The notes beneath the pieces were generated by a model that searched no databases, had not been told where the DNA came from, and saw only the letters and a list, made by a program, of their open reading frames with translations. From IMG/VR virus record IMGVR_UViG_3300033892_000026, positions 1-13,583 of that record: 13,583 nucleotides of DNA. One strand, given 5' to 3'. The position numbers were made by a program, and so were the translations under genes. Positions 1 to 13,583 of the stretch are shown piece by piece; within the stretch, counting starts at the first letter, position 1, and every line of letters starts with the position of its first letter.

Positions 1-16
1 AAGAGGAGTGAAAGAA

Positions 17-745
17 ATGGACAGGGATGAGCTTAAACAAATTATTCAAAACCTTCCAGATAACTCACCTAAACTTTTAGAGTATTTGAAAGAGGCAAGG
101 GAGAAGGGATGGGCTGACGTTGTTGACATGATTGCAATAAAGCTGGGGCTGAAGGAAGAGAAGAAAAAAGGAAAGAGAGAGGAGAGCGAGTTACTTAGGA
201 AGATTCTGAAACCCTTGGGCAAAAAGAAGATAGAACACACGTGGGATTACTCGGTGGATTTCACCGAAGCCAGGAAAGTACTTACATCTGCCTACAAACA
301 GCTGTATGATATGAATCTCATGCCCTACGAGGCGTACGTCGCTATCCTCCTCATACAACTAACAAACGGATCTAGAATCAAAGAAGCGATAAGGGCGTTT
401 AAGACGTTCGTAGAGTCAGGGCAAAGAGAGTTCCAGTTACAGGCTGAGAAGCACGGTAACACAAGGTTTTTCATCATCCATGACGTCATCAGGAACAGGC
501 TAGCGTATAAATCGATACTGACAATCTCGGACGACAAACTAGAAGCGAGGATAAGGATGTTCGCACTGAAGTACCTGAAATGTAACACACATTCGTTACG
601 TTACGCACTGATCTCCTTCCTTGCAAAAAATGCCACAGACCCTGCAATCATCGCGAAGATAACAGGTCACAAAAAATTGAACAGGATAATACAGTACACA
701 CAGACAAAGGACGCCATCGATATTTTGCGTAAGCTTTCTTCCTAG
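17..745 (+). CDS. int: Tyrosine recombinase / integrase (small, about 242 aa)
   Basis: The catalytic set is visible in order: R (NGSRIKEA), K (AEKHG), HxxR (THSLRY), H (ITGHK), Y (IQYT). GAGGAG at 3-8 favours ATG at 17 over GTG at 8. Size is similar to the ~240-aa integrases of ATV-like viruses (recalled). Confidence 0.92.
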   Translation: MDRDELKQIIQNLPDNSPKLLEYLKEAREKGWADVVDMIAIKLGLKEEKKKGKREESELLRKILKPLGKKKIEHTWDYSVDFTEARKVLTSAYKQLYDMNLMPYEAYVAILLIQLTNGSRIKEAIRAFKTFVESGQREFQLQAEKHGNTRFFIIHDVIRNRLAYKSILTISDDKLEARIRMFALKYLKCNTHSLRYALISFLAKNATDPAIIAKITGHKKLNRIIQYTQTKDAIDILRKLSS

Positions 746-799: not shown

Positions 800-1009
800 A
801 TGGTGGAACTAAAGTTACGATGGAGAATTAAGACAACGAAGAAAAATGGTAAAGTATATCCTATATATTATATTTCAGTGCCAGGAAGGTCGGCTATTTT
901 TCTGTTGGATTATGAGCCATACCTAGACCCGGTAAACAAGGTAATCGTTTTTAAACCTAAACAAAACACCCAACAGAACAGTACCCAAAATCAACCCCAA
1001 AGTCAATAA
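800..1009 (+). CDS. Small basic protein, probable AbrB/SpoVT/MazE-like swapped-hairpin DNA-binding protein
   Basis: RBS AGGTGA at 790-795. The pattern K..NGK.Y.IYYISVP...KVIVFKP resembles archaeal AbrB-like proteins (YYITIP ... IVLKP). C-terminal tail is Q/N-rich. Confidence 0.6.
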   Translation: MVELKLRWRIKTTKKNGKVYPIYYISVPGRSAIFLLDYEPYLDPVNKVIVFKPKQNTQQNSTQNQPQSQ

Positions 1010-1024
1010 TTCTTTTCTTTTTTT
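1010..1024 (+). terminator. Oligo-T archaeal terminator
   Basis: TTCTTTTCTTTTTTT directly after the stop codon at 1009. Confidence 0.65.
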
Positions 1025-1037
1025 CCTTCTCTCTTTT

Positions 1038-1049
1038 TAACAGCTGTTT
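1038..1049. promoter_or_regulatory. Palindromic site (1-mismatch copy, TAACA-GC-TGTTT)
   Basis: Same position relative to terminator and promoter as the exact copy at 1348-1359. Confidence 0.7.
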
Positions 1050-1075
1050 TAAGATGCTCGGCTCGTAGTTCCCGT

Positions 1076-1105
1076 CTAACTTGTTGTGCAGAAATTTTAA
1101 ATACC
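1076..1105 (+). promoter_or_regulatory. Conserved 30-bp promoter block, copy 1 (CTAAC box, BRE, TATA)
   Basis: CTAACTTGTTGTGCAGAAATTTTAAATACC aligns without gaps to 1397-1426 and 1773-1802. TATA lies about 25 nt before ATG 1129 (leaderless geometry). Confidence 0.85.
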
Positions 1106-1128
1106 ACTCCTTCCAATAATTAAGTACA

Positions 1129-1314
1129 ATGAACCCAGACGAAGTGATGGTCAAAAAAATAATAGACATTTTAGAAAAAGATTTAAATCAGTTACAACAA
1201 ACCCTGCAACAAATATCAAAGAAAAATTTAGACAGAAACACGCTAGATGAAGCATATTTTTTGTCTCAAGAAATCCAAATGTATCTGTACAAGTTATTCA
1301 CTTTCGCAACCTAA
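1129..1314 (+). CDS. Hypothetical 61-aa helical protein (cassette gene 1)
   Basis: Has its own promoter and terminator; amphipathic helical pattern. Confidence 0.75.
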   Translation: MNPDEVMVKKIIDILEKDLNQLQQTLQQISKKNLDRNTLDEAYFLSQEIQMYLYKLFTFAT

Positions 1315-1331
1315 AAGTCAACCCGTTTTTT
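1315..1331 (+). terminator. Conserved terminator AAG(T/C)CAACCCG-Tn, copy 1
   Basis: AAGTCAACCCGTTTTTT directly after the stop; near-identical to 1681-1703. Confidence 0.75.
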
Positions 1332-1342
1332 ATTCACTTCTC

Positions 1343-1364
1343 CTCTCAAACAGCTGTTTTAGAG
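1343..1364. promoter_or_regulatory. Palindromic site CTCTCAAACA-GC-TGTTTTAGAG
   Basis: 10-bp arms with 1 mismatch; exact AAACA-NN-TGTTT core at 1348-1359. Confidence 0.8.
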
Positions 1365-1396
1365 TTTCATTGGATGCCAAGCCCGTTAGCTTCAGC

Positions 1397-1426
1397 CTAA
1401 CAAGTTGAGTAGAAAATTTAAATACC
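1397..1426 (+). promoter_or_regulatory. Conserved 30-bp promoter block, copy 2
   Basis: CTAACAAGTTGAGTAGAAAATTTAAATACC, followed by RBS GAGGAGG at 1447-1453. Confidence 0.85.
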
Positions 1427-1460
1427 AGTCTTAACATAATAGTAATGAGGAGGAATAAAA

Positions 1461-1676
1461 ATGATAGAGGTAGAAGTTAAGAAAAAAGAAGATATAGTAC
1501 AATTTGTAATTAATTCAAACGAAGAATTTATAAGAAGTGGTATAGTGGAAATTCCTAAAAAAGAATTTGACGAATGTATCAAGATTAAAGAAGAAGAACT
1601 AGGTTATGAATCCTCTTCTGCAGAAAGAGAAGCAATTTTCAATTATATCTTTTACAAAAAGTGTACCCTAACATAG
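1461..1676 (+). CDS. Hypothetical 71-aa Glu/Lys-rich protein (cassette gene 2)
   Basis: Strong RBS, own promoter and terminator; very AT-rich coding sequence. Confidence 0.8.
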   Translation: MIEVEVKKKEDIVQFVINSNEEFIRSGIVEIPKKEFDECIKIKEEELGYESSSAEREAIFNYIFYKKCTLT

Positions 1677-1680
1677 ACGC

Positions 1681-1703
1681 AAGCCAACCCGTTTTTTTTT
1701 TTT
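1681..1703 (+). terminator. Conserved terminator, copy 2
   Basis: AAGCCAACCCG followed by T12, starting 5 nt after the stop. Confidence 0.8.
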
Positions 1704-1772
1704 AATCCTTTCTTCTCTCAAGCAGTCGTTAAGACCTCCTTTCTTCCACACCATTCTCCCAACTCTTTTCCT

Positions 1773-1802
1773 CTAACCTTTTATGCAGAAAACTTAAATA
1801 TC
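1773..1802 (+). promoter_or_regulatory. Conserved 30-bp promoter block, copy 3
   Basis: CTAACCTTTTATGCAGAAAACTTAAATATC, preceded by a degenerate palindrome CTCTCAAGCA-GT-CGTTAAGA at 1715-1734. Confidence 0.8.
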
Positions 1803-1832
1803 TGAGTTAGTACACACATATAGTGAACAAAT

Positions 1833-2393
1833 ATGTCCTCTCCACAACCACAAGTTAAGTCAAATCCTAAGTCAGATCAAACTACTAATTCTACTCTAAC
1901 GTGGGAGGAGGTCTTACGGGCTACAAGAATAGATAAACAGCATATAGATTTTGCAATAGCACATATCGATACTGCACCAGTTATGCCGTATGAATTCATT
2001 TACAGCAAATATATCCCTTCGGATTTCAAAGTCTTCCATCCCGCTAGTGTTGCGGTTAGCGGGGCAGGAGGAGTGATAGGGTCTATTTTAGCTTTAAGAC
2101 ATGCCAGAGCAGTTAAGTACTTTGTAACAACCCAGGAAGTACTGAATTCCAACGACAAATCGCCATTGTTTCTAGCGAAGTATGCTTTAGAATTATTAGA
2201 GAAAAAATACAGAGATGTAGAAATAATTACAATAGACCTTGGTGAGTTCGAGAAAATAAAAATGCTGTTAAGTTATGGCGGGATATATATATCAGGGTTG
2301 CCTAATGAGATTATCGTTGAGATTGCCCAATTAGCGGGTTTTGGAAGATTATGGCATTTCTCGCCTATTCATCGAAAGTTCTACGTGTTCTAA
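1833..2393 (+). CDS. Hypothetical 186-aa alpha/beta protein (possible Rossmann/CARF-like fold)
   Basis: Long ORF under promoter copy 3. Disordered N-terminus followed by an alternating strand/helix pattern. The fold call is speculative. Confidence 0.8.
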   Translation: MSSPQPQVKSNPKSDQTTNSTLTWEEVLRATRIDKQHIDFAIAHIDTAPVMPYEFIYSKYIPSDFKVFHPASVAVSGAGGVIGSILALRHARAVKYFVTTQEVLNSNDKSPLFLAKYALELLEKKYRDVEIITIDLGEFEKIKMLLSYGGIYISGLPNEIIVEIAQLAGFGRLWHFSPIHRKFYVF

Positions 2394-2410
2394 ATTTCGA
2401 GGTGACAACA

Positions 2411-3163
2411 GTGAGCGAACAACAGTTTGAGAGCGAACAACAGTTTGAGCCAGAAATAAAAAAATTTAGGTGGTTGATTTCACAAGGTTATATAACTTCT
2501 ACGGAGTTAGCATTTTATTCTAACTTTTACAATATCGAGTTAACCACTATAGTCAGCTTCCAGGGACATGATGTATTAACTCCACTATTTATAGTAGCGA
2601 GACCAAGCAGATTTTATCAGATAAAGAGAGAATTAGCAGAAGCGGAAATAGCAGACCCGATTTCAAGAAAGTTCCCTGTTGTTTCCTTACTAAGTCTAGA
2701 AAAGTTTATCAATTCCCTAGTAAACATGAAAATACCCTACTTCTTCTTCTCATTATTTCTAGATAAATCTTATAATCTCCCACAAGAAGTTAACAGATTC
2801 TTATCAATTTTGATAGAGCTGGCAAACAGTTCAGGGAAGTACATCATAAAACCTTACAACATAAAAACAGAACCCCTACCGCTGAGCATAGAACCAGTGA
2901 AAGACGAGTTATATAAAGTAATTTGCCATTTCAGGAAGATGCTAGGGAATACAGTTGAGTGTAATGATGACGGGTGGTGGAAGTACAATCTTTGGGGCAA
3001 CAGAAATACTGCCAGTGTTGACAGAAAAATGATAGAGAAAATAGCACTACAATATAACATCTCGCCGATTTGCGTACAGTACGTTTTGGCATATAACAAA
3101 AACCCTTGCCACCTTTCATCGGATATCGTAAGTAAAATAAAATCCCATCTCTCTTCTTCTTAA
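2411..3163 (+). CDS. Hypothetical protein (about 250 aa)
   Basis: RBS GAGGTGA at 2399-2405 precedes an in-frame GTG at 2411, which removes the overlap implied by the 2351 start. T-run follows the stop. Confidence 0.8.
   Translation: MSEQQFESEQQFEPEIKKFRWLISQGYITSTELAFYSNFYNIELTTIVSFQGHDVLTPLFIVARPSRFYQIKRELAEAEIADPISRKFPVVSLLSLEKFINSLVNMKIPYFFFSLFLDKSYNLPQEVNRFLSILIELANSSGKYIIKPYNIKTEPLPLSIEPVKDELYKVICHFRKMLGNTVECNDDGWWKYNLWGNRNTASVDRKMIEKIALQYNISPICVQYVLAYNKNPCHLSSDIVSKIKSHLSSS
2414..2449 (+). repeat. Perfect 18-bp tandem duplication (encodes SEQQFE x2)
   Basis: AGCGAACAACAGTTTGAG at 2414-2431 and 2432-2449. Confidence 0.95.
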
Positions 3164-3175
3164 TTTTTTCTCTCC

Positions 3176-3697
3176 TTACGAAATGTTCGTATTCTGTTTT
3201 CTCTCCTTTTTCTTTATCTTTTTTGCATCTATCACTTCTATTACCCCTTCTTCTTCCAGATATTCTAGCACAACGTCACTATCATCTATCATTATGGCTT
3301 TATTCTGATCGTATTTTTCCATTAGCTCCTTTACGATAATTCTCTTAAATTCATGGTCTTTCCTGAAGTCCTTTTCGCCCCTCAGCACGACCTCGTTCGG
3401 CTCTATCCCTATCTCTGACAGTTGTTTGAGAGTTGCTTCGCGTTGTTTTTCCGAACGACCGCTGACTACTGCTATCACTTCTGGCTTTTCCTCCTCAATC
3501 AGCCGTTTGACAAACCTGATAACTTCCCACTTAGGTTCGTCCAGGTTCATGAACCTCGGTGATTGATAACATTCCCAAAACGCACGGTCGGGTTTCCAGG
3601 ATAATGTTTTCTTGTCTCCTCTGGATATCTTCTCGCATTCGTTCCACCTGGCAGAAGTATCGAAAAGCGTGCCGTCCATATCCAAGACCAGCATCAT
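3176..3697 (-). CDS. HAD-superfamily phosphatase, similar to the polynucleotide kinase 3'-phosphatase domain
   Basis: Motif I LDMDGT, motif II VVSGR, motif III RKDHEFK, motif IV IDDS. GGAGG RBS; ATGA overlap with the upstream gene. Confidence 0.88.
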   Translation of the reverse strand: MMLVLDMDGTLFDTSARWNECEKISRGDKKTLSWKPDRAFWECYQSPRFMNLDEPKWEVIRFVKRLIEEEKPEVIAVVSGRSEKQREATLKQLSEIGIEPNEVVLRGEKDFRKDHEFKRIIVKELMEKYDQNKAIMIDDSDVVLEYLEEEGVIEVIDAKKIKKKERKQNTNIS

Positions 3698-4275
3698 TTT
3701 CCTCCACTCCCTTGTGGTTCCTTAAAACCTAATATTGTTATTTTCCCGTTCTCTTCTTTGAACTCTAACTCCTTTCCCTTCCCCTCGACACTGTACACGA
3801 AGTAAAACGTTTTGAGACCTTTTTGGTCTCTTTCCCATGCTAATTTGCTACACTTCCCATCAAACCTAGTATTAAAGTAGTCTATCGCCTCCTGGTCGTT
3901 CTCTTCTTTTGCTATTTTTTCTAACGTTGCAGGGTCAAAAGGTTGATAGAATAAGTAGACCTTCTTATTGCCTTTTCCATCATCAAAAAAGAAGTATATT
4001 CCGTATTTGAACAGGTTAAGGTTTGATTGTACCATTATTTCACGGTGTTTCATGATATATTCGTTATCTGCAACGGCAGAAACATAAAGTGTATCGTGTC
4101 CGTCGCCTATGCCTATACATAGCAGGTTTGTATGTACGAACTTGTCGTTTTTGATCCTGTCTATTCTGACATAGAAAGAGACGTATGCTACGCCTATGGT
4201 CGGTGTATCTTGGGGCATAAAACCTTCGACACGCACTATGAAGTATTTGTCTATGTCGACTTTCGAGTTTACCAT
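3694..4275 (-). CDS. Hypothetical 193-aa beta-rich protein
   Basis: Minus-strand TATA (TTTTTAAAG, 4305-4297) lies about 22 nt upstream of the ATG; translationally coupled to the HAD gene. Confidence 0.8.
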   Translation of the reverse strand: MVNSKVDIDKYFIVRVEGFMPQDTPTIGVAYVSFYVRIDRIKNDKFVHTNLLCIGIGDGHDTLYVSAVADNEYIMKHREIMVQSNLNLFKYGIYFFFDDGKGNKKVYLFYQPFDPATLEKIAKEENDQEAIDYFNTRFDGKCSKLAWERDQKGLKTFYFVYSVEGKGKELEFKEENGKITILGFKEPQGSGGK

Positions 4276-4296: not shown

Positions 4297-4363
4297 CTTT
4301 AAAAAGTCGAATCACCTCTCAAACATCTGTTTAAGAGCAAATTCCTTCTGGCTGGTTTTTAAA
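4297..4363. promoter_or_regulatory. Divergent promoter with central palindrome CTCTCAAACA-TC-TGTTTAAGAG (4316-4337)
   Basis: Back-to-back TATA boxes (4297-4305 minus, 4356-4363 plus) flank a 22-bp palindrome with 1 mismatch. Confidence 0.8.
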
Positions 4364-6213: not shown

Positions 6214-6870
6214 ATGGCATATACTAAAAAACAAAACGAAGTCCCTACTCCTGAACAGTTCCAATTCATTGTCTATAAAGAGGTGTGTATGGGGGACAAA
6301 AGCCTTGTACATCCTACCATAGCCATAGAGAGGTTAAACACTATAATGCTTACCTATTACAGCGACGAGATAGAGGAACTGTGGAGGGAATTAGTTCTCA
6401 AAAGATATGAGAACGCCACGTCTGAGGACGAACTAAGGCAGATTCTGCAAATTGGCTGTGACCTCATGTTTATCGTAATGAACGCGTCTGGCGAAGATGT
6501 CAAGTCGTTAGTAACGAAAATACTGAACAACACAAGGAAAAAACATCTGTTTTATGTCAACGAGGAAGGACTAGTTGCTGAAAGTTCGTATCTCATAGAC
6601 GTGCTGACAAGGTTTGTGAACCCCAACGGGTTCGATGTGTTGACTGTTTTAAGCATACTAAAGGACGTGCAAATTAGGACGGCTACTATGATTAGCAGTA
6701 TTAAGGGGACGTCACTGTATCAGTCGCTTATAAGTGAACTAGGCATTGATGAAAATACTATTGAGAAAAAATGCACGGCGAAGTACTATAGGGAATGCGT
6801 AACTGAGAAGAAAACGCAGTTGCTGAAAGCGTTACAGTTTATCAGGATGAACATAAATATTCCGCGTTAG
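6214..6870 (+). CDS. Hypothetical 218-aa all-alpha protein (weak MazG-like pattern)
   Basis: RBS GAGGTGG at 6201-6207; helical composition. Confidence 0.8.
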   Translation: MAYTKKQNEVPTPEQFQFIVYKEVCMGDKSLVHPTIAIERLNTIMLTYYSDEIEELWRELVLKRYENATSEDELRQILQIGCDLMFIVMNASGEDVKSLVTKILNNTRKKHLFYVNEEGLVAESSYLIDVLTRFVNPNGFDVLTVLSILKDVQIRTATMISSIKGTSLYQSLISELGIDENTIEKKCTAKYYRECVTEKKTQLLKALQFIRMNINIPR

Positions 6871-6909: not shown

Positions 6910-6952
6910 GGGGACGGAAAGCCTCGCCCTTCCAAGGCGGGGAGGAGGTCAG
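6910..6952 (+). mobile_element. 43-bp IS200/IS605-family remnant (single hairpin; probable left-end/right-end fusion scar)
   Basis: GC-rich island in AT-rich DNA: GGGGACGGAAAG-CCTCGCC-CTTCCAA-GGCGGGG-AGGAGGTCAG. It follows TTAA (6906-6909) and ends in TCAG, resembling the subterminal hairpins of Sulfolobales IS605-type elements (recalled). Clean removal restores a TAA stop and adjacent terminator for the neighbouring gene. Confidence 0.75.
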
Positions 6953-7236
6953 TATGTATTTACATTTACATTTAGTTTTTTGAGCAGTTCATCCATGAGG
7001 CGTTTATCCTTTTTTAAAATGTCTGCGATATCATCAATATAGTCCTCGACAATCTCTTCTAGGATATCGTCAATGTGTTCTCTGACAATCTCTTCTAAAT
7101 CGTTACGGTCGAACTCGACATCATCAACATCAACATCAACATAACCTTTGTAGTCGTCGCATATGATTCCTTCGTATGTATCATTATAACAAATGTCCTC
7201 TAAGTCTTTGTATCTTATAAACACCGGGACTTTCAC
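6949..7236 (-). CDS. Highly acidic 95-aa protein (29 D/E) with an internal 12-aa duplication
   Basis: GTG start with a GGGGCG RBS-like element; minus-strand TATA TTTATATA (7282-7275); T-run terminator on the minus strand at 6899-6894. Confidence 0.85.
   Translation of the reverse strand: MKVPVFIRYKDLEDICYNDTYEGIICDDYKGYVDVDVDDVEFDRNDLEEIVREHIDDILEEIVEDYIDDIADILKKDKRLMDELLKKLNVNVNTY
7027..7098. repeat. Imperfect 36-bp tandem duplication (LEEIVREHIDDI / LEEIVEDYIDDI)
   Basis: GATATCATCAATATAGTCCTCGACAATCTCTTCTAG versus GATATCGTCAATGTGTTCTCTGACAATCTCTTCTAA. Confidence 0.85.
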
Positions 7237-7273: not shown

Positions 7274-7301
7274 GTATATAAACCTCAAACAGCTGTTTTT
7301 T
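7274..7301 (-). promoter_or_regulatory. Promoter of the acidic ORF with a palindrome over the BRE region
   Basis: TATA at 7282-7275; CTCAAACA-GC-TGTTT at 7284-7298 directly upstream of it. Confidence 0.75.
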
Positions 7302-7325
7302 AAAGCGGAATACGGATTTCACTCC

Positions 7326-9718: not shown

Positions 9719-9769
9719 TTTTTAAAGCGATTCCAAGACTCAAACAGATGTTTGAGGAAAATTTATAAG
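9719..9769. promoter_or_regulatory. Divergent promoter with perfect palindrome CTCAAACA-GA-TGTTTGAG (9739-9756)
   Basis: Minus-strand TATA at 9719-9726; plus-strand BRE GAAAA at 9757-9761 and TATA TTTATAAG at 9762-9769; perfect 8-bp arms between them. Confidence 0.85.
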
Positions 9770-11546: not shown

Positions 11547-13583
11547 ATGCAAAACTTCTTTAATAATAATGAAGACGACGAGGAGAAACAACTAATACAA
11601 CTAACAGACACTGTCTTTAAAACAGTATCCAAATTACTTAGGATTGGAGCTGACATTAGTGACAGTGTATGGAATACTGTACATAAACTTGTTAAGATAG
11701 CATCAGAACAAAATAAACTTCTATTACAATTCCCAGCAATCCTCGCTTATTTCGTTTATAATTTTCTAAAAAACATCGACCTAGATAGAATTGACGACAT
11801 AAACGAAAAACTGGACGATATCCAACGTCTGATAAAGCGTAAGAACCTTCAGGGTTTATCATTCAACACCATCAAACAGATGTTACAACAGGAGTTGCAG
11901 GAGAGAAAATTCAGACGTAACAGACCTAACAAAACAGAAAAACAACAAGAAGGACAGAAGCAAGGCGAAAAAGAAGGAGAAAAACAGGAAGAGGGAGAAG
12001 AAGGGCAAGAAAGTGGAGAAGAAGGACAAAACATGAATCAAGAGGGTGAAGGAGAAGGACAGGAATCAGAAGGTGAAGGAGAGGGAGAAGAAGAATTAGG
12101 AGAAGAAGGAGAGGGAGGGGAAAGTGAAAATGAAGGGAGCCAGGAACAACAGAGACAGGAATTAGAAAAAGAAAGTCAGGAGAGTAACGGGCAAGAAAAC
12201 GGTGAGGAACAAGAAGGTGAAGAAAGCAATGAAGGGGAACAACAAGGTGGAGAAGGAGAATCACAGGAAGGTGTAGAAGAAGGAGAAGCTGAGGGGAGCC
12301 AGAGCGGAGAAGAGGGAGAGGAGGCAGAATCACAGGGTGAAGAAGGACAAAGCGAGGAAGAAGGAAACGAAGGAGAACAAGGTAATGCCCAGGAAGGACA
12401 AGAATTAGGAGAGGAAGAAGGGGAACAAAGCGAAAACGAAGGACAAAATGGCGAGGAGCAGGGAGGTCAGAACAGTGGAGAAGGACAAGAGGGTAATGAG
12501 GAAGAAAGTGAAGGAAGCCCGAGCGGGGAACAGGAATCAGAAGGAGAATCGCAAGAAGGCGAACAAGGAGGTGGTGAAGAGGGTGAAGGTGGAGAGGAAG
12601 GTGGAGAGCAGGAAGGTGGTGAAGGAGAAGGAAGCGAAAGTGAAAGTACCCAAGGTCAAAATGGTGAACAAGGTGGAGAGGGTTCAGAAGGTGGAGAAGG
12701 GCAAGAAGTTGAAGATATTTTCGAAGACCTCGAAGACAACATTAACGAGGAATCAATGATCTTAGATCAGTTGGAAGAAAGCCTGCAAAAATCACTGACA
12801 GCATTATCAGTTGGGAAAGGCTCGGGAGGAGGAATACTAAACGAAGTCAATCCTAGAATTTTAGAACTGTTAGAGAATGCTAACAGGATTCTGGCTCTGG
12901 CTAACCAGGTCGATTTAGAGTACGCTAACAGAGGCGTTAAGGATCAAGGAGGTGTAATGAAGGGGATAACGACTGGAAATAATATTAAACACATGTTTAA
13001 GAGTCAACTGCTCCTACCAGATGAGATTTTCCTAGAACGCTACACGAACAGAGCTTTACTACAAAGGGCAGTGGAAAACGAGGGAGTCGGAGACTTCTAT
13101 TTCCTTATAGACAAAAGCGGATCGATGAGAAGTACAATGCCGAACGGGTATACGGCATTTGAAAACGTTTCTGCCGTAGCCTTAGCTTCTGCTATGGAAG
13201 CTGAAAAGAATAATAAGAAGGTATTTGTACAGTACTTCGATACTTCATCAACTGAGCCTTTGGACGTTAACAACGTTTTCGAGATAGCTCAGACCGAACC
13301 TGGAGGAGGAACTGACATGATGGACGCACTAAAACACTTCATGGATTATTATAATAACTATCCAGGGTTAAAGGACGTTAGACAGATCTTCATAATGTCT
13401 GACTTTGAGACGAATTATGATAGATTTACTCTTGAGGAGTTTAAGAACTTTGCAAGAAATAATAACCTAGTAGTGACATGTCTGCATGTATATGGTGATG
13501 ATAAAGTGCCTGATGAAATGCAATACATAATAGACGAAATCTGTGACGAATATTACAAATTTAATAACTATGACGCCAGCGAA
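11547..13583 (+). CDS. VWA (MIDAS) domain protein with a long acidic linker, MoxR partner (ATV p892-like); truncated by the window end
   Basis: ATG 4 nt after the ATPase stop (MQNFFNNNEDDEEKQ...); 679 codons to the window end. The same frame gives YFLIDKSGSM (DxSxS at 13110-13124), PGGGTD and IFIMSDF. Absent from the ORF track, consistent with having no stop in the window. Confidence 0.92.
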   Translation, partial: MQNFFNNNEDDEEKQLIQLTDTVFKTVSKLLRIGADISDSVWNTVHKLVKIASEQNKLLLQFPAILAYFVYNFLKNIDLDRIDDINEKLDDIQRLIKRKNLQGLSFNTIKQMLQQELQERKFRRNRPNKTEKQQEGQKQGEKEGEKQEEGEEGQESGEEGQNMNQEGEGEGQESEGEGEGEEELGEEGEGGESENEGSQEQQRQELEKESQESNGQENGEEQEGEESNEGEQQGGEGESQEGVEEGEAEGSQSGEEGEEAESQGEEGQSEEEGNEGEQGNAQEGQELGEEEGEQSENEGQNGEEQGGQNSGEGQEGNEEESEGSPSGEQESEGESQEGEQGGGEEGEGGEEGGEQEGGEGEGSESESTQGQNGEQGGEGSEGGEGQEVEDIFEDLEDNINEESMILDQLEESLQKSLTALSVGKGSGGGILNEVNPRILELLENANRILALANQVDLEYANRGVKDQGGVMKGITTGNNIKHMFKSQLLLPDEIFLERYTNRALLQRAVENEGVGDFYFLIDKSGSMRSTMPNGYTAFENVSAVALASAMEAEKNNKKVFVQYFDTSSTEPLDVNNVFEIAQTEPGGGTDMMDALKHFMDYYNNYPGLKDVRQIFIMSDFETNYDRFTLEEFKNFARNNNLVVTCLHVYGDDKVPDEMQYIIDEICDEYYKFNNYDASE
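11935..12750 (+). repeat. Low-complexity purine-rich tract encoding an E/G/Q/S-rich linker of about 270 aa
   Basis: Reiterated GAA/GGA/GAG/CAA codons (EGEGEG, QESEGE, EELGEEEG motifs). Confidence 0.9.

What the first reader, a model, noticed from the sequence alone, without database searches (positions are those of the whole stretch)
1010..1833. Array of modular expression cassettes next to the integrase
Three consecutive intergenic regions share one layout: stop codon, oligo-T terminator (AAG(T/C)CAACCCG-Tn in two of them), pyrimidine tract, palindrome, variable spacer, a gaplessly aligned 30-bp CTAAC..AGAAA..TTAAATA.C promoter, then an unrelated orphan ORF. The cargo genes show no evident similarity to each other while the flanks are conserved. 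Inference: this is an exchangeable early-gene array in which shared flanks allow gain, loss or shuffling of cargo by homologous recombination. An integron-like role for the adjacent tyrosine recombinase is possible but speculative. In archaeal viruses, anti-CRISPR and other anti-defence genes are known to be small genes behind a shared strong early promoter.
Basis: partly seen in the sequence, partly recalled or inferred. Interest (0 to 1): 0.8.

Follow-up and report, generated by a model that had tools for sequence, protein, structure and literature searches.

The report
Shuffled promoter-terminator gene cassettes, archaeal virus
Next to the integrase of a Sulfolobus spindle-virus genome fragment sit three self-contained gene units that share one promoter/terminator module, and comparison with relatives shows that these shared modules are where genes get swapped, added, lost and reordered, much as in the hyperplastic regions of T4-like phages.

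Summary
Window 1010-1833 holds three intergenic regions with one layout: oligo-T/pyrimidine tract, palindrome (degenerate in the third), spacer, CTAAC box, BRE/TATA. The promoter pattern occurs 3 times against 0.01 expected, and nowhere else in the window. The window is a fragment of an SMV3-like Sulfolobus monocaudavirus.

The cargo is not orphan. ORF61 is an SSV1 D-63-family protein. ORF71 is a small protein restricted to this lineage. The third unit drives a conserved two-gene operon annotated as virion structural proteins.

The shared promoter is already published. Bhoobalan-Chitty 2024 listed the SMV3 counterparts gp46-48 as predicted early/anti-defence genes. In SMV3 the same module also precedes gp63, an aCcr1 homologue that arrests cell division.

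New here: at least 10 cassette architectures occur at this locus in relatives. Homology breaks fall in the shared modules, a chimeric promoter exists, ORF-only allele swaps lie between 95-97% identical flanks, and identity of D-63 and the structural protein is uncorrelated across contigs. This fits homologous recombination between repeated regulatory modules, like the PeSLs of T4-type phages.

An integron-like role for the integrase is not supported. Early timing and anti-defence function remain untested. The distal palindrome is a genome-wide intergenic motif of unknown function.

The parts
8..745 (+). Tyrosine integrase (245 aa). This is the conserved left anchor of the variable locus, not shown to act on the cassettes.
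   Evidence: phrog_9208 integrase, E 3.6e-140. Pfam Phage_integrase 25.5 bits, just under the cut-off. NCBIfam XerA/integron-integrase model only 16 bits against a 220-bit cut-off.
800..1009 (+). ORF69, a small conserved gene probably co-transcribed with the integrase (AGGTGA Shine-Dalgarno, no room for its own promoter). It forms the left border of the array.
   Evidence: phrog_18276, E 2.4e-30. Homologues follow the integrase in SMV3 gp49, SMV1 gp33 and the metagenomic relatives.
1010..1050 (+). Joint 1: oligo-T/pyrimidine terminator tract (1010-1036) plus the distal palindrome TTAACAGCTGTTTT (1037-1050).
   Evidence: In L006, L008 and L019 a 317-aa minus-strand gene is inserted exactly at window 1038/1039.
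1076..1103 (+). Promoter 1: CTAAC box, BRE GCAGAAA (1088-1094), TATA TTTAAATA (1096-1103). The ATG lies 25 nt after the TATA, so the mRNA is predicted to be leaderless.
   Evidence: PWM 56 bits. 95-97% identical to L010 although the ORF downstream is only 47-77% identical.
1129..1314 (+). Cargo 1: ORF61, an SSV1 D-63-family helical-hairpin protein. It is the most constant member of the array. A published hypothesis makes it the regulator ('ADa').
   Evidence: Pfam PF20940, E 1.6e-12. PDB 1SKV, E 8.6e-4. SMV3 gp48 is listed as ADa in PMC11065993. 47 D-63-family cargo instances lie behind this promoter in relatives, 39 of them short D-63 and 8 long D-63-like.
1315..1364 (+). Joint 2: AAGTCAACCCG plus T6 terminator, pyrimidine tract, and the 22-bp palindrome CTCTCAAACAGCTGTTTTAGAG (1343-1364).
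   Evidence: AACCCG-Tn follows 37 of 39 D-63 genes, and the palindrome follows 39 of 39. Homology to SMV3, L006, L008, L012 and L019 ends at 1364-1366.
1397..1424 (+). Promoter 2: CTAAC box, BRE, TATA (1417-1424). GAGGAGG Shine-Dalgarno ahead of the ATG at 1461.
   Evidence: PWM 48 bits. Orthologous promoter in L010.
1461..1676 (+). Cargo 2: ORF71, a lineage-restricted small protein (three strands then two helices) of unknown function. This is the exchangeable slot, occupied in relatives by a C2H2 zinc-finger protein, a 145-aa D-63-like protein, a 172-aa protein, or nothing.
   Evidence: 11 close homologues, all unnamed and all from environmental sequence. AlphaFold pLDDT 88.5. No PDB fold match, best E 0.25. 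phrog_15325, E 1.4e-5. No match in the phage records. Slot contents.
1677..1734 (+). Joint 3: AAGCCAACCCG plus T12 terminator, pyrimidine tract, degenerate palindrome (1715-1734). It is a chimera of two joints that are separate in L010.
   Evidence: window 1681-1725 aligns to both ends of the 585-bp extra cassette of L010. Homology to the SMV3-type loci resumes at 1695-1698.
1773..1800 (+). Promoter 3: CTAAC box, BRE, TATA variant CTTAAATA (1793-1800). ATG at 1833.
   Evidence: PWM 44 bits. The orthologous promoter precedes the same gene in 47 relatives.
1833..3163 (+). Cargo 3: a two-gene operon, ORF186 (1833-2393) and ORF250 (GTG 2411-3163, GAGGTGA Shine-Dalgarno). It is conserved, annotated as virion structural proteins, and forms the right anchor of the variable locus.
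   Evidence: phrog_17386 and phrog_16306. tblastn hits in SMV3, SMV4, ATV ORF187 and ATV2.

Best explanation
The window is part of an SMV3-like Sulfolobus monocaudavirus genome. Downstream of the integrase-ORF69 operon lie three autonomous transcription units in tandem.

Each unit starts with the same lineage-specific regulatory module:
- a distal palindrome (CAAACAGCTGTTTG-like)
- a 19-95 nt spacer
- a CTAAC box, which in relatives is an imperfect CTAACnnGTTAG inverted repeat abutting the BRE
- a purine-rich BRE
- a consensus TATA box about 25-38 nt before the start codon

The single-gene units end in an AACCCG-oligo(T) archaeal terminator followed by a pyrimidine tract. The host RNA polymerase with TBP/TFB would start at each module and stop at each T-tract. 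A factor binding the CTAAC box would then switch the whole set together (inferred).

The same module drives about 15 unrelated cargo families in related viruses. It has six copies in SMV3, one of them in front of the aCcr1 homologue gp63. It is therefore a regulon promoter, published as a predicted early/anti-defence promoter.

Because terminator, palindrome and promoter recur between every pair of genes, they act as portable homology. Recombination between them, within one genome or between co-infecting relatives, deletes, inserts, replaces and reorders cassettes.

Shown: the anatomy, the regulon membership, the variability and the positions of the junctions. Inferred: promoter and terminator activity, timing, the regulator, and the recombination pathway.
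For: Anatomy and non-chance occurrence.

Identity of the virus and synteny.

Regulon:
- Six module copies in SMV3, at gp46, gp47, gp48, gp63, gp69 and gp71.
- 187 non-redundant instances with about 20 cargo clusters in IMG/VR and JGI contigs.
- None in the Sulfolobales of 185,579 species genomes; only 4 bacterial hits.
- Supplementary Data 1 of PMC11065993 lists SMV3 gp46, gp47, gp48, gp62, gp69 and gp71 on the basis of this shared sequence.
- gp63 is the tested aCcr1 homologue (PMC9976878).

Shuffling, at least 10 architectures between ORF69 and the structural operon:
- D63 then VP187
- D63, ZnF, VP187
- D63, F74, VP187 (the window)
- D63, F74, D63L, VP187 (L010), against D63, D63L, F74 (L140)
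- F74, C13, ZnF, VP187 (L065)
- acidic55 then D63 (L026), against D63 then acidic55 (L055)

Junctions:
- Homology to SMV3-type loci stops at 1364-1366 and resumes at 1695-1698.
- The extra cassette of L010 is flanked by a 45-bp repeat that is present once in the window.
- L066 and L028 join the D-63 terminator to the VP187 spacer at the palindrome. L044 carries a chimeric promoter, ZnF-type up to the TATA and VP187-type after it.
- Window against L010: flanks 95-97% identical, D-63 ORF 47-77%, VP187 92-100%.
- D-63 and VP187 identities are uncorrelated over 171 contig pairs (Spearman -0.0007).

Terminator and joint conservation.

The terminators are T-tracts rather than hairpins, and there is no known RNA family.
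Against: - No transcript, TSS, timing or binding data exist for this virus or for SMV3. Promoter, terminator and regulon behaviour are inferred from consensus and conservation.
- Most promoters still travel with their own cargo (for example 40 of 47 VP187 promoters are VP187-type in all three segments). Much of the pattern is therefore vertical inheritance of whole units.
- Within the window the modules are only 64-79% identical to each other, with no more than about 13 bp of exact identity. Recombination between this genome's own copies would need very short homology.
- Most relatives are short-read metagenome contigs. Where the flanks are about 150 bp and identical (L026 against L055), an assembler could mis-order the cassettes.
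- One large difference, the roughly 3.3-kb gap in SMV1, has its junction inside genes and not in a module.
- The third cargo is annotated as structural, which sits uneasily with a purely early/anti-defence regulon.
Confidence: 0.72

Rival explanations
1. Integron-like system. The palindrome (8-bp arms around a CAGCTG core) is a site for the adjacent tyrosine recombinase, which excises cassettes as circles and reinserts them.
For: - The array abuts the integrase in the window, SMV3, SMV4, L006, L008, L010, L012, L032 and L065.
- Several breakpoints lie right beside a palindrome: 1038/1039 and 1364-1366.
- A minus-strand cassette (F83) lies between two palindromes.
- The arm-core-arm geometry resembles recombinase core sites (from general knowledge, not tested).
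Against: - Junctions occur at several different positions: the promoter TATA in L044, the T-tract in the window against L010, and the ORF edges for the D-63 allele swap.
- Each cassette has its own promoter and terminator, unlike integron cassettes.
- The palindrome sits in 22 of 32 cases in intergenic regions all over SMV3, between core genes whose order is conserved. It is equally dense in SMV1, which lacks the array.
- The F21 insertion has no palindrome at its other end.
- The integrase is not IntI-like.
Confidence: 0.06
2. Plain regulon. The modules are conserved only because they co-regulate genes. The variability of the locus comes from ordinary illegitimate recombination and gene flux in an accessory region, and the modules play no part in it.
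For: - Promoters mostly cluster by cargo rather than by genome.
- The deletion in SMV1 has junctions inside genes.
- Regulon members elsewhere in SMV3 and SMV4 are dispersed and often lack the terminator joint.
Against: - Breakpoints in independent comparisons coincide with the joints.
- A 45-bp repeat flanks the inserted cassette.
- A chimeric promoter exists.
- ORF-only replacement occurs between 95-97% identical flanks.
- The same cassettes occur in permuted order.
Confidence: 0.15
3. Artefact. The apparent cassette diversity is produced by misassembly of metagenomic reads at repeated intergenic sequences.
For: Most relatives are short-read metagenome contigs. In L026 and L055 the flanks are about 150 bp and identical, long enough to confuse an assembler.
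Against: - The deposited complete genomes of SMV3, SMV4 and SMV1 already differ in architecture.
- In the window the repeats share no more than about 13 bp exactly, far below assembler k-mers.
- The same architecture recurs in contigs from different samples, for example D63, F74, VP187 in the window, L051, L088 and L106.
Confidence: 0.04
4. Tandem duplication of one ancestral gene with its flanks, followed by divergence. The cargos would then be old paralogues and no exchange would be needed.
For: The spacers share remnants (ccagctcg-like stretches), showing that the modules themselves are paralogous. D-63 and the 145-147-aa protein share a D-63-like C-terminus.
Against: - ORF61 (helical hairpin), ORF71 (three strands plus two helices) and ORF186 show no similarity in an all-against-all BLASTP.
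- Duplication alone does not explain the different occupants of the same slot in close relatives, or the lack of any correlation between D-63 and VP187 identity.
Confidence: 0.03

Closest known systems
PeSL (promoter-early stem-loop) mobile regulatory cassettes of T4-type phages (Arbiol 2010, PMC2839356; Comeau 2014, PMC4122927)
   Same: - A short composite terminator-plus-strong-promoter unit is repeated between small, mostly uncharacterised genes in a hyperplastic region bounded by conserved genes.
- Insertions, deletions and replacements between close relatives have their junctions in the repeated unit.
- Homologous recombination is the proposed mechanism.
   Different: - The parts are archaeal: BRE/TATA with an oligo-T terminator and no stem-loop, plus two extra palindromic boxes.
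- The host is a crenarchaeon and the virus a large spindle virus.
- Promoter and terminator activity and mini-circles were demonstrated for PeSLs and are untested here.
Shared early/anti-defence regulatory sequences of archaeal viruses (Bhoobalan-Chitty 2024, PMC11065993)
   Same: - A strong BRE plus TTTAWATA core sits inside a virus-specific conserved sequence in front of single small genes.
- SMV3 gp46 and gp48 (homologues of ORF186 and ORF61) and gp47 (the C2H2 zinc-finger protein in the slot that ORF71 occupies here, not homologous to ORF71) are in that paper's list.
- The paper notes inverted repeats overlapping the BRE in SMV2 as a likely repressor site.
   Different: - The paper does not mention terminators, palindromes or recombination, and it describes monocaudavirus ADGs as randomly located.
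- Here three members form a tandem array with composite joints and documented cassette exchange.
- Early timing was shown for SIRV2, not for monocaudaviruses.
PeSL-like motif of haloarchaeal tailed virus HGTV-1 (Sencilo 2013, as summarised in PMC3950731)
   Same: An archaeal virus in which many ORFs are preceded by a conserved motif with a TATA-like box and an inverted repeat. The motif was suggested to serve both regulation and genome shuffling.
   Different: Different virus realm (a tailed virus of a haloarchaeon). Going by the summary I read, shuffling was suggested by analogy, without comparative breakpoints.
Integrons
   Same: An array of small, variable, unrelated genes lies next to a tyrosine recombinase gene, with a palindromic element between the genes.
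   Different: - Cassettes here carry their own promoters and terminators.
- Junctions are not at one site.
- The palindrome is genome-wide.
- The recombinase is not IntI-like.

Membership tests
PeSL-type mobile regulatory cassettes | A composite terminator plus strong early-type promoter in one short intergenic unit. | tested here: met
   An oligo-T terminator followed within 60-130 nt by a consensus BRE/TATA in all three IGRs. This is the archaeal equivalent, with no stem-loop. Activity was not measured.
PeSL-type mobile regulatory cassettes | Multiple copies clustered in a variable region, flanking small accessory genes between conserved anchors. | tested here: met
   3 copies in 0.8 kb between integrase-ORF69 and the structural operon, and none in the other 12.7 kb. 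Up to 4 tandem copies in relatives.
PeSL-type mobile regulatory cassettes | Indels and replacements between close relatives with breakpoints inside the repeated unit. | tested here: met
PeSL-type mobile regulatory cassettes | Excised mini-circles formed by recombination between neighbouring units. | not testable with these tools
   Needs outward PCR or long reads on virus DNA.
Archaeal-virus early/anti-defence regulon (PMC11065993) | A strong purine-rich BRE plus a TTTAWATA TATA box. | tested here: met
   GCAGAAA followed by TTTAAATA in IGR1. IGR2 has GTAGAAA with TTTAAATA. IGR3 has CTTAAATA. Definition taken.
Archaeal-virus early/anti-defence regulon (PMC11065993) | Conserved sequence around the core promoter, shared by several single genes of the same genome. 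| tested here: met
   3 copies in the window and 6 in SMV3. The SMV3 genes at the corresponding positions are listed in the paper's Supplementary Data 1.
Archaeal-virus early/anti-defence regulon (PMC11065993) | Immediate-early transcription. | not testable with these tools
   I found no transcriptome for SMV3-like viruses.
Archaeal-virus early/anti-defence regulon (PMC11065993) | The cargo inhibits a host defence system. | tested here: inconclusive
   - ORF71 has no fold or family match.
- ORF61 is D-63 family, with no known activity.
- ORF186 and ORF250 are annotated as structural.
- One regulon member in SMV3 (gp63) manipulates the host cell cycle rather than a defence system.
Integron | An IntI-type integrase. 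| tested here: not met
   16 bits against a 220-bit cut-off for the NCBIfam XerA/integron-integrase model. The best match is the archaeal-virus integrase phrog_9208.
Integron | Promoterless cassettes expressed from one common promoter. | tested here: not met
   Each cassette has its own BRE/TATA and its own T-tract terminator.
Integron | Exchange at one defined site (attC/attI). | tested here: not met
   Junctions lie in the T-tract, beside the palindrome, in the TATA box and at the ORF edges.
SSV1 D-63 protein family (cargo 1) | A match to Pfam PF20940 above the gathering score. | tested here: met
   47.6 bits against a cut-off of 27. PDB 1SKV, E 8.6e-4.

The most novel reading that the evidence does not exclude
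The 22-bp palindrome (8-bp arms around CAGCTG) marks most transcription-unit boundaries in SMV1, SMV3 and SMV4-type genomes, at about 5 copies per 10 kb and roughly 100-fold over chance. On the most novel reading it is a dedicated boundary or linker element bound by a viral protein, and it also serves as a programmed exchange point. That would be a virus-wide, built-in system for modular gene exchange, possibly catalysed by the adjacent tyrosine recombinase. The integrase-proximal cassette array would then be only its most active instance.
Probability: 0.07. Interest if true: 0.85.

Novelty: new variant of a known kind. Interest (0 to 1): 0.5.

Why it matters
- It gives the first comparative, breakpoint-level evidence I could find that a crenarchaeal virus diversifies its accessory genes by recombination between repeated terminator/promoter modules. 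That principle was previously worked out for T4-like phages.
- It turns a published in-silico promoter signature into a locus-level model with testable parts: two operator-like boxes, a conserved terminator and a defined variable slot.
- It yields a catalogue of about 15 cargo families behind one promoter in Yellowstone-type hot-spring viromes. These are candidates for host-takeover or anti-defence functions.
- It places a known cell-cycle manipulator, the aCcr1 homologue, in the same regulon.
- It also flags an unexplained genome-wide intergenic palindrome in monocaudaviruses.

Tried and rejected
- Bacterial sigma-70 and hairpin-terminator scan: no enrichment, and not relevant to an archaeal virus.
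- Rfam at E up to 1: only two weak hits outside the region (snoR41, HgcC), both far below their gathering scores. tRNA scan: none.
- RNA folding of the three terminator/palindrome regions: no significant structure (z from -0.6 to +1.1). The palindrome is therefore not a terminator hairpin.
- ORF71 function:
  - no Pfam or NCBIfam hit
  - a weak PHROG of unknown function
  - no match in the phage records
  - only close unnamed environmental homologues
  - a confident AlphaFold model with no PDB fold match
- Promoter pattern in 185,579 species genomes: only 4 bacterial chance hits, so there is no host regulon that could identify the regulator.
- The SMV1 gap as a module-mediated deletion: rejected. 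Its junction keeps the 3' end of the F21 gene and the start region of F13.
- aCcr1-box as the CTAAC box: the published 9-bp motif does not resemble it. I left this as not supported.
- Pfam on ten further window ORFs, to look for a DNA-binding candidate: only the PNK phosphatase matched.
Full report
**What the window is.** Megablast places the 13,583-bp window in the Sulfolobus monocaudavirus group. It is about 83% identical over 77% of its length to SMV3, and it also matches SMV4 and SMV1. It is IMG/VR contig 3300033892_000026. The plus-strand genes at the left end are:
- an integrase (8-745; phrog_9208, E 3.6e-140)
- ORF69 (800-1009; phrog_18276)
- ORF61 (1129-1314)
- ORF71 (1461-1676)
- ORF186 (1833-2393)
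- ORF250 (GTG 2411-3163)

They are followed by a convergent polynucleotide-kinase-phosphatase gene.

**Checking the observation.**
- The 28-nt promoter pattern matches exactly three times. Shuffles give 0.01 expected.
- A weight matrix built from relatives finds nothing else in the window.
- The AAG(T/C)CAACCCG-Tn terminator is present after ORF61 and ORF71.
- The palindrome is good in IGR1 and IGR2 and degenerate in IGR3.
- RNA folding gives no significant hairpins. The terminators are therefore of the archaeal oligo-T kind, and the palindrome is a DNA-level element.

**The cargo is not orphan.**
- ORF61 belongs to the SSV1 D-63 family (Pfam 47.6 bits against a cut-off of 27; PDB 1SKV).
- ORF186 and ORF250 are a conserved pair with homologues in SMV3, SMV4, ATV (ORF187) and ATV2. 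RefSeq annotates them as virion structural proteins.
- ORF71 has only close, unnamed environmental homologues. It has a confident model of three strands plus two helices (pLDDT 88.5) with no fold match.
- The three cargos are unrelated to one another.

**The promoter module is a regulon signal, and that part is published.**
- Scanning SMV3 piece by piece finds six copies, in front of gp46, gp47, gp48, gp63, gp69 and gp71.
- Bhoobalan-Chitty et al. 2024 (PMC11065993) list SMV3 gp46, gp47, gp48 (as 'ADa', a helix-turn-helix protein of the fuselloviral T5 transcript), gp62, gp69 and gp71 as predicted anti-defence genes. Their basis is a shared regulatory sequence around a strong BRE/TTTAWATA core.
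- gp63 is the aCcr1 homologue whose over-expression arrests cell division (PMC9976878).
- Exact-pattern scans found 17 stretches in IMG/VR and more than 120 in JGI metagenomes, but nothing in Sulfolobales genomes.
- These scans give 187 non-redundant promoter instances in front of about 15 credible cargo families.
- In relatives the box upstream of the BRE is an imperfect CTAACnnGTTAG inverted repeat, in the position of an operator.
- 75% of instances have the distal palindrome within 180 nt upstream. This holds even where the upstream neighbour is a divergent gene rather than a terminator.

**The locus is hyperplastic.** Between the anchors ORF69 and ORF186 I found at least ten architectures:
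- D63 then VP187
- D63, ZnF, VP187 (SMV3 and several contigs, some with an extra 317-aa minus-strand gene before D63)
- D63, F74, VP187 (the window, L051, L088, L106)
- D63, F74, D63L, VP187 (L010)
- D63, D63L, F74 (L140)
- D63, D63L, ZnF, VP187 (L027)
- acidic55, D63, C05, VP187 (L012)
- F74, C13, ZnF, VP187 (L065)
- D63L then VP187 (SMV4)
- ZnF, F83 (minus strand), VP187 (L018)
- nothing at all (SMV1)

**Where the junctions are.**
- Against SMV3, L006, L008, L012 and L019, homology ends at window 1364-1366, just after the IGR2 palindrome. It resumes at 1695-1698, in the IGR3 T-tract (L019: 1735). The exchanged unit is therefore spacer, promoter, ORF and stop.
- L010 has one extra 585-bp cassette at window 1695. 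Window 1681-1725 aligns to both of its ends, so the window's IGR3 is a chimera of the two L010 joints.
- L066 and L028 join the D-63 terminator to the VP187 spacer at the palindrome. L044 has lost the zinc-finger gene through a crossover inside the promoter core: it is ZnF-type up to the TATA and VP187-type after it.
- Window against L010: IGR1 is 95-97% identical, the D-63 ORF 47-77%, IGR2 85-95% and VP187 92-100%. This is an ORF-only allele replacement between conserved flanks.
- Across 19 contigs, D-63 and VP187 identities are uncorrelated (Spearman -0.0007, p 0.99). For example, L010 and L044 share an identical D-63 protein but are only 64% identical in VP187.
- The joint itself is strongly conserved. 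Of 39 D-63 genes, 39 are followed by a T-tract and the palindrome, and 37 by AACCCG-Tn.

**Mechanism.** Junctions at several positions inside the repeated modules, a flanking direct repeat, chimeric promoters and complete reassortment all point to homologous recombination between repeated regulatory sequences. This is the PeSL model of T4-type phages (PMC2839356, PMC4122927). The idea was earlier suggested by analogy for haloarchaeal virus HGTV-1 (PMC3950731). Bhoobalan-Chitty et al. do not mention recombination, terminators or palindromes.

**Why not an integron.**
- The cassettes have their own promoters and terminators.
- The junctions are not at one site.
- The integrase is not IntI-like.
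- The palindrome is a genome-wide intergenic mark. In SMV3, 22 of 32 sites are intergenic against 14% expected (p 4.5e-12). Its density is about 5 per 10 kb in the SMV1, SMV3 and SMV4 loci and in the window (2.9 in L016), and it is absent from the ATV fragment.

**Caveats.**
- Nothing here measures transcription, timing, binding or recombination.
- Most promoters still travel with their cargo.
- The window's own modules share no more than about 13 exact bases.
- Order permutations between contigs with identical 150-bp flanks (L026 against L055) could be assembly errors. The variants with diverged flanks and the deposited complete genomes cannot be.
- The SMV1 gap is not module-mediated.

**Verdict.** The shared promoter is already known. 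The cassette-shuffling role of the composite joint is a new variant of a known kind.

Noticed in passing
window 295-308, 3411-3432, 4316-4337, 7282-7303, 9737-9758, 12982-13003 (and the three array copies): The palindrome CAAACAGCTGTTTG (up to 22 bp, CTCTCAAACAGCTGTTTGAGAG) is dispersed over the whole window: 14 hits with up to 3 mismatches against 0.5 expected. It lies mostly at transcription-unit boundaries. In SMV3, 22 of 32 sites are intergenic (p 4.5e-12). It is equally dense in SMV1 and SMV4 and absent from an ATV fragment. Its function is unknown; it may be an operator, a boundary element or an exchange point.
   Followed up: partly
window 2413-2448: A perfect 18-bp tandem duplication (GAGCGAACAACAGTTTGA, twice) lies at the start of ORF250 and repeats six residues. 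Each copy contains a half-palindrome (AACAGTTTGAGAG). L010 shows an 18-column gap in this block of the alignment, consistent with a single copy there.
   Followed up: no
window 295-308; SMV3 record 40348-40361: A copy of the palindrome lies inside the integrase ORF. It is perfect in SMV3 and has one mismatch in the window. SSV-type integrases carry attP inside their own gene. I did not examine whether this site is related to attP.
   Followed up: no
L145 (SMV3 record 49768-49807, minus strand): The array's promoter module also sits directly upstream of SMV3 gp63. This is the aCcr1 RHH homologue shown experimentally to block host cell division (PMC9976878). An RHH gene with the same promoter occurs in SMV4 (L009) and in three metagenome contigs.
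   Followed up: partly
L002 6990-7180 (SMV1): SMV1 lacks everything from the array to the gene before window 4276, about 3.3 kb including the two 'structural' genes and the PNK phosphatase. The junction keeps the 3' end of the 317-aa minus-strand gene seen in other relatives and the start region of the window's 3694-4275 gene. It is therefore an intragenic deletion, not a module-mediated one.
   Followed up: partly
L010 7462-8850; L027 6787-8166: Two relatives carry an extra gene of about 460 aa between the homologues of window 6214-6870 and 6949-7236. The window lacks it. It was not identified.
   Followed up: no
L032 (minus orientation) 3760-4149; L013 1060-1801 and 2076-3025: In L032 the ORF69 homologue is duplicated in tandem and fused into a 129-aa ORF. 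In the SMV4 locus the integrase and the 317-aa gene each appear split into two ORFs.
   Followed up: no
L012 (minus orientation) 6613-6652 and 6963-7002; L026 and L055: A small, very acidic 46-59-aa protein (ending DSVSM) forms an extra cassette. Its promoter and terminator are nearly identical to those of the neighbouring D-63 cassette. It lies before D-63 in L026, L135 and L012 and after it in L055.
   Followed up: partly
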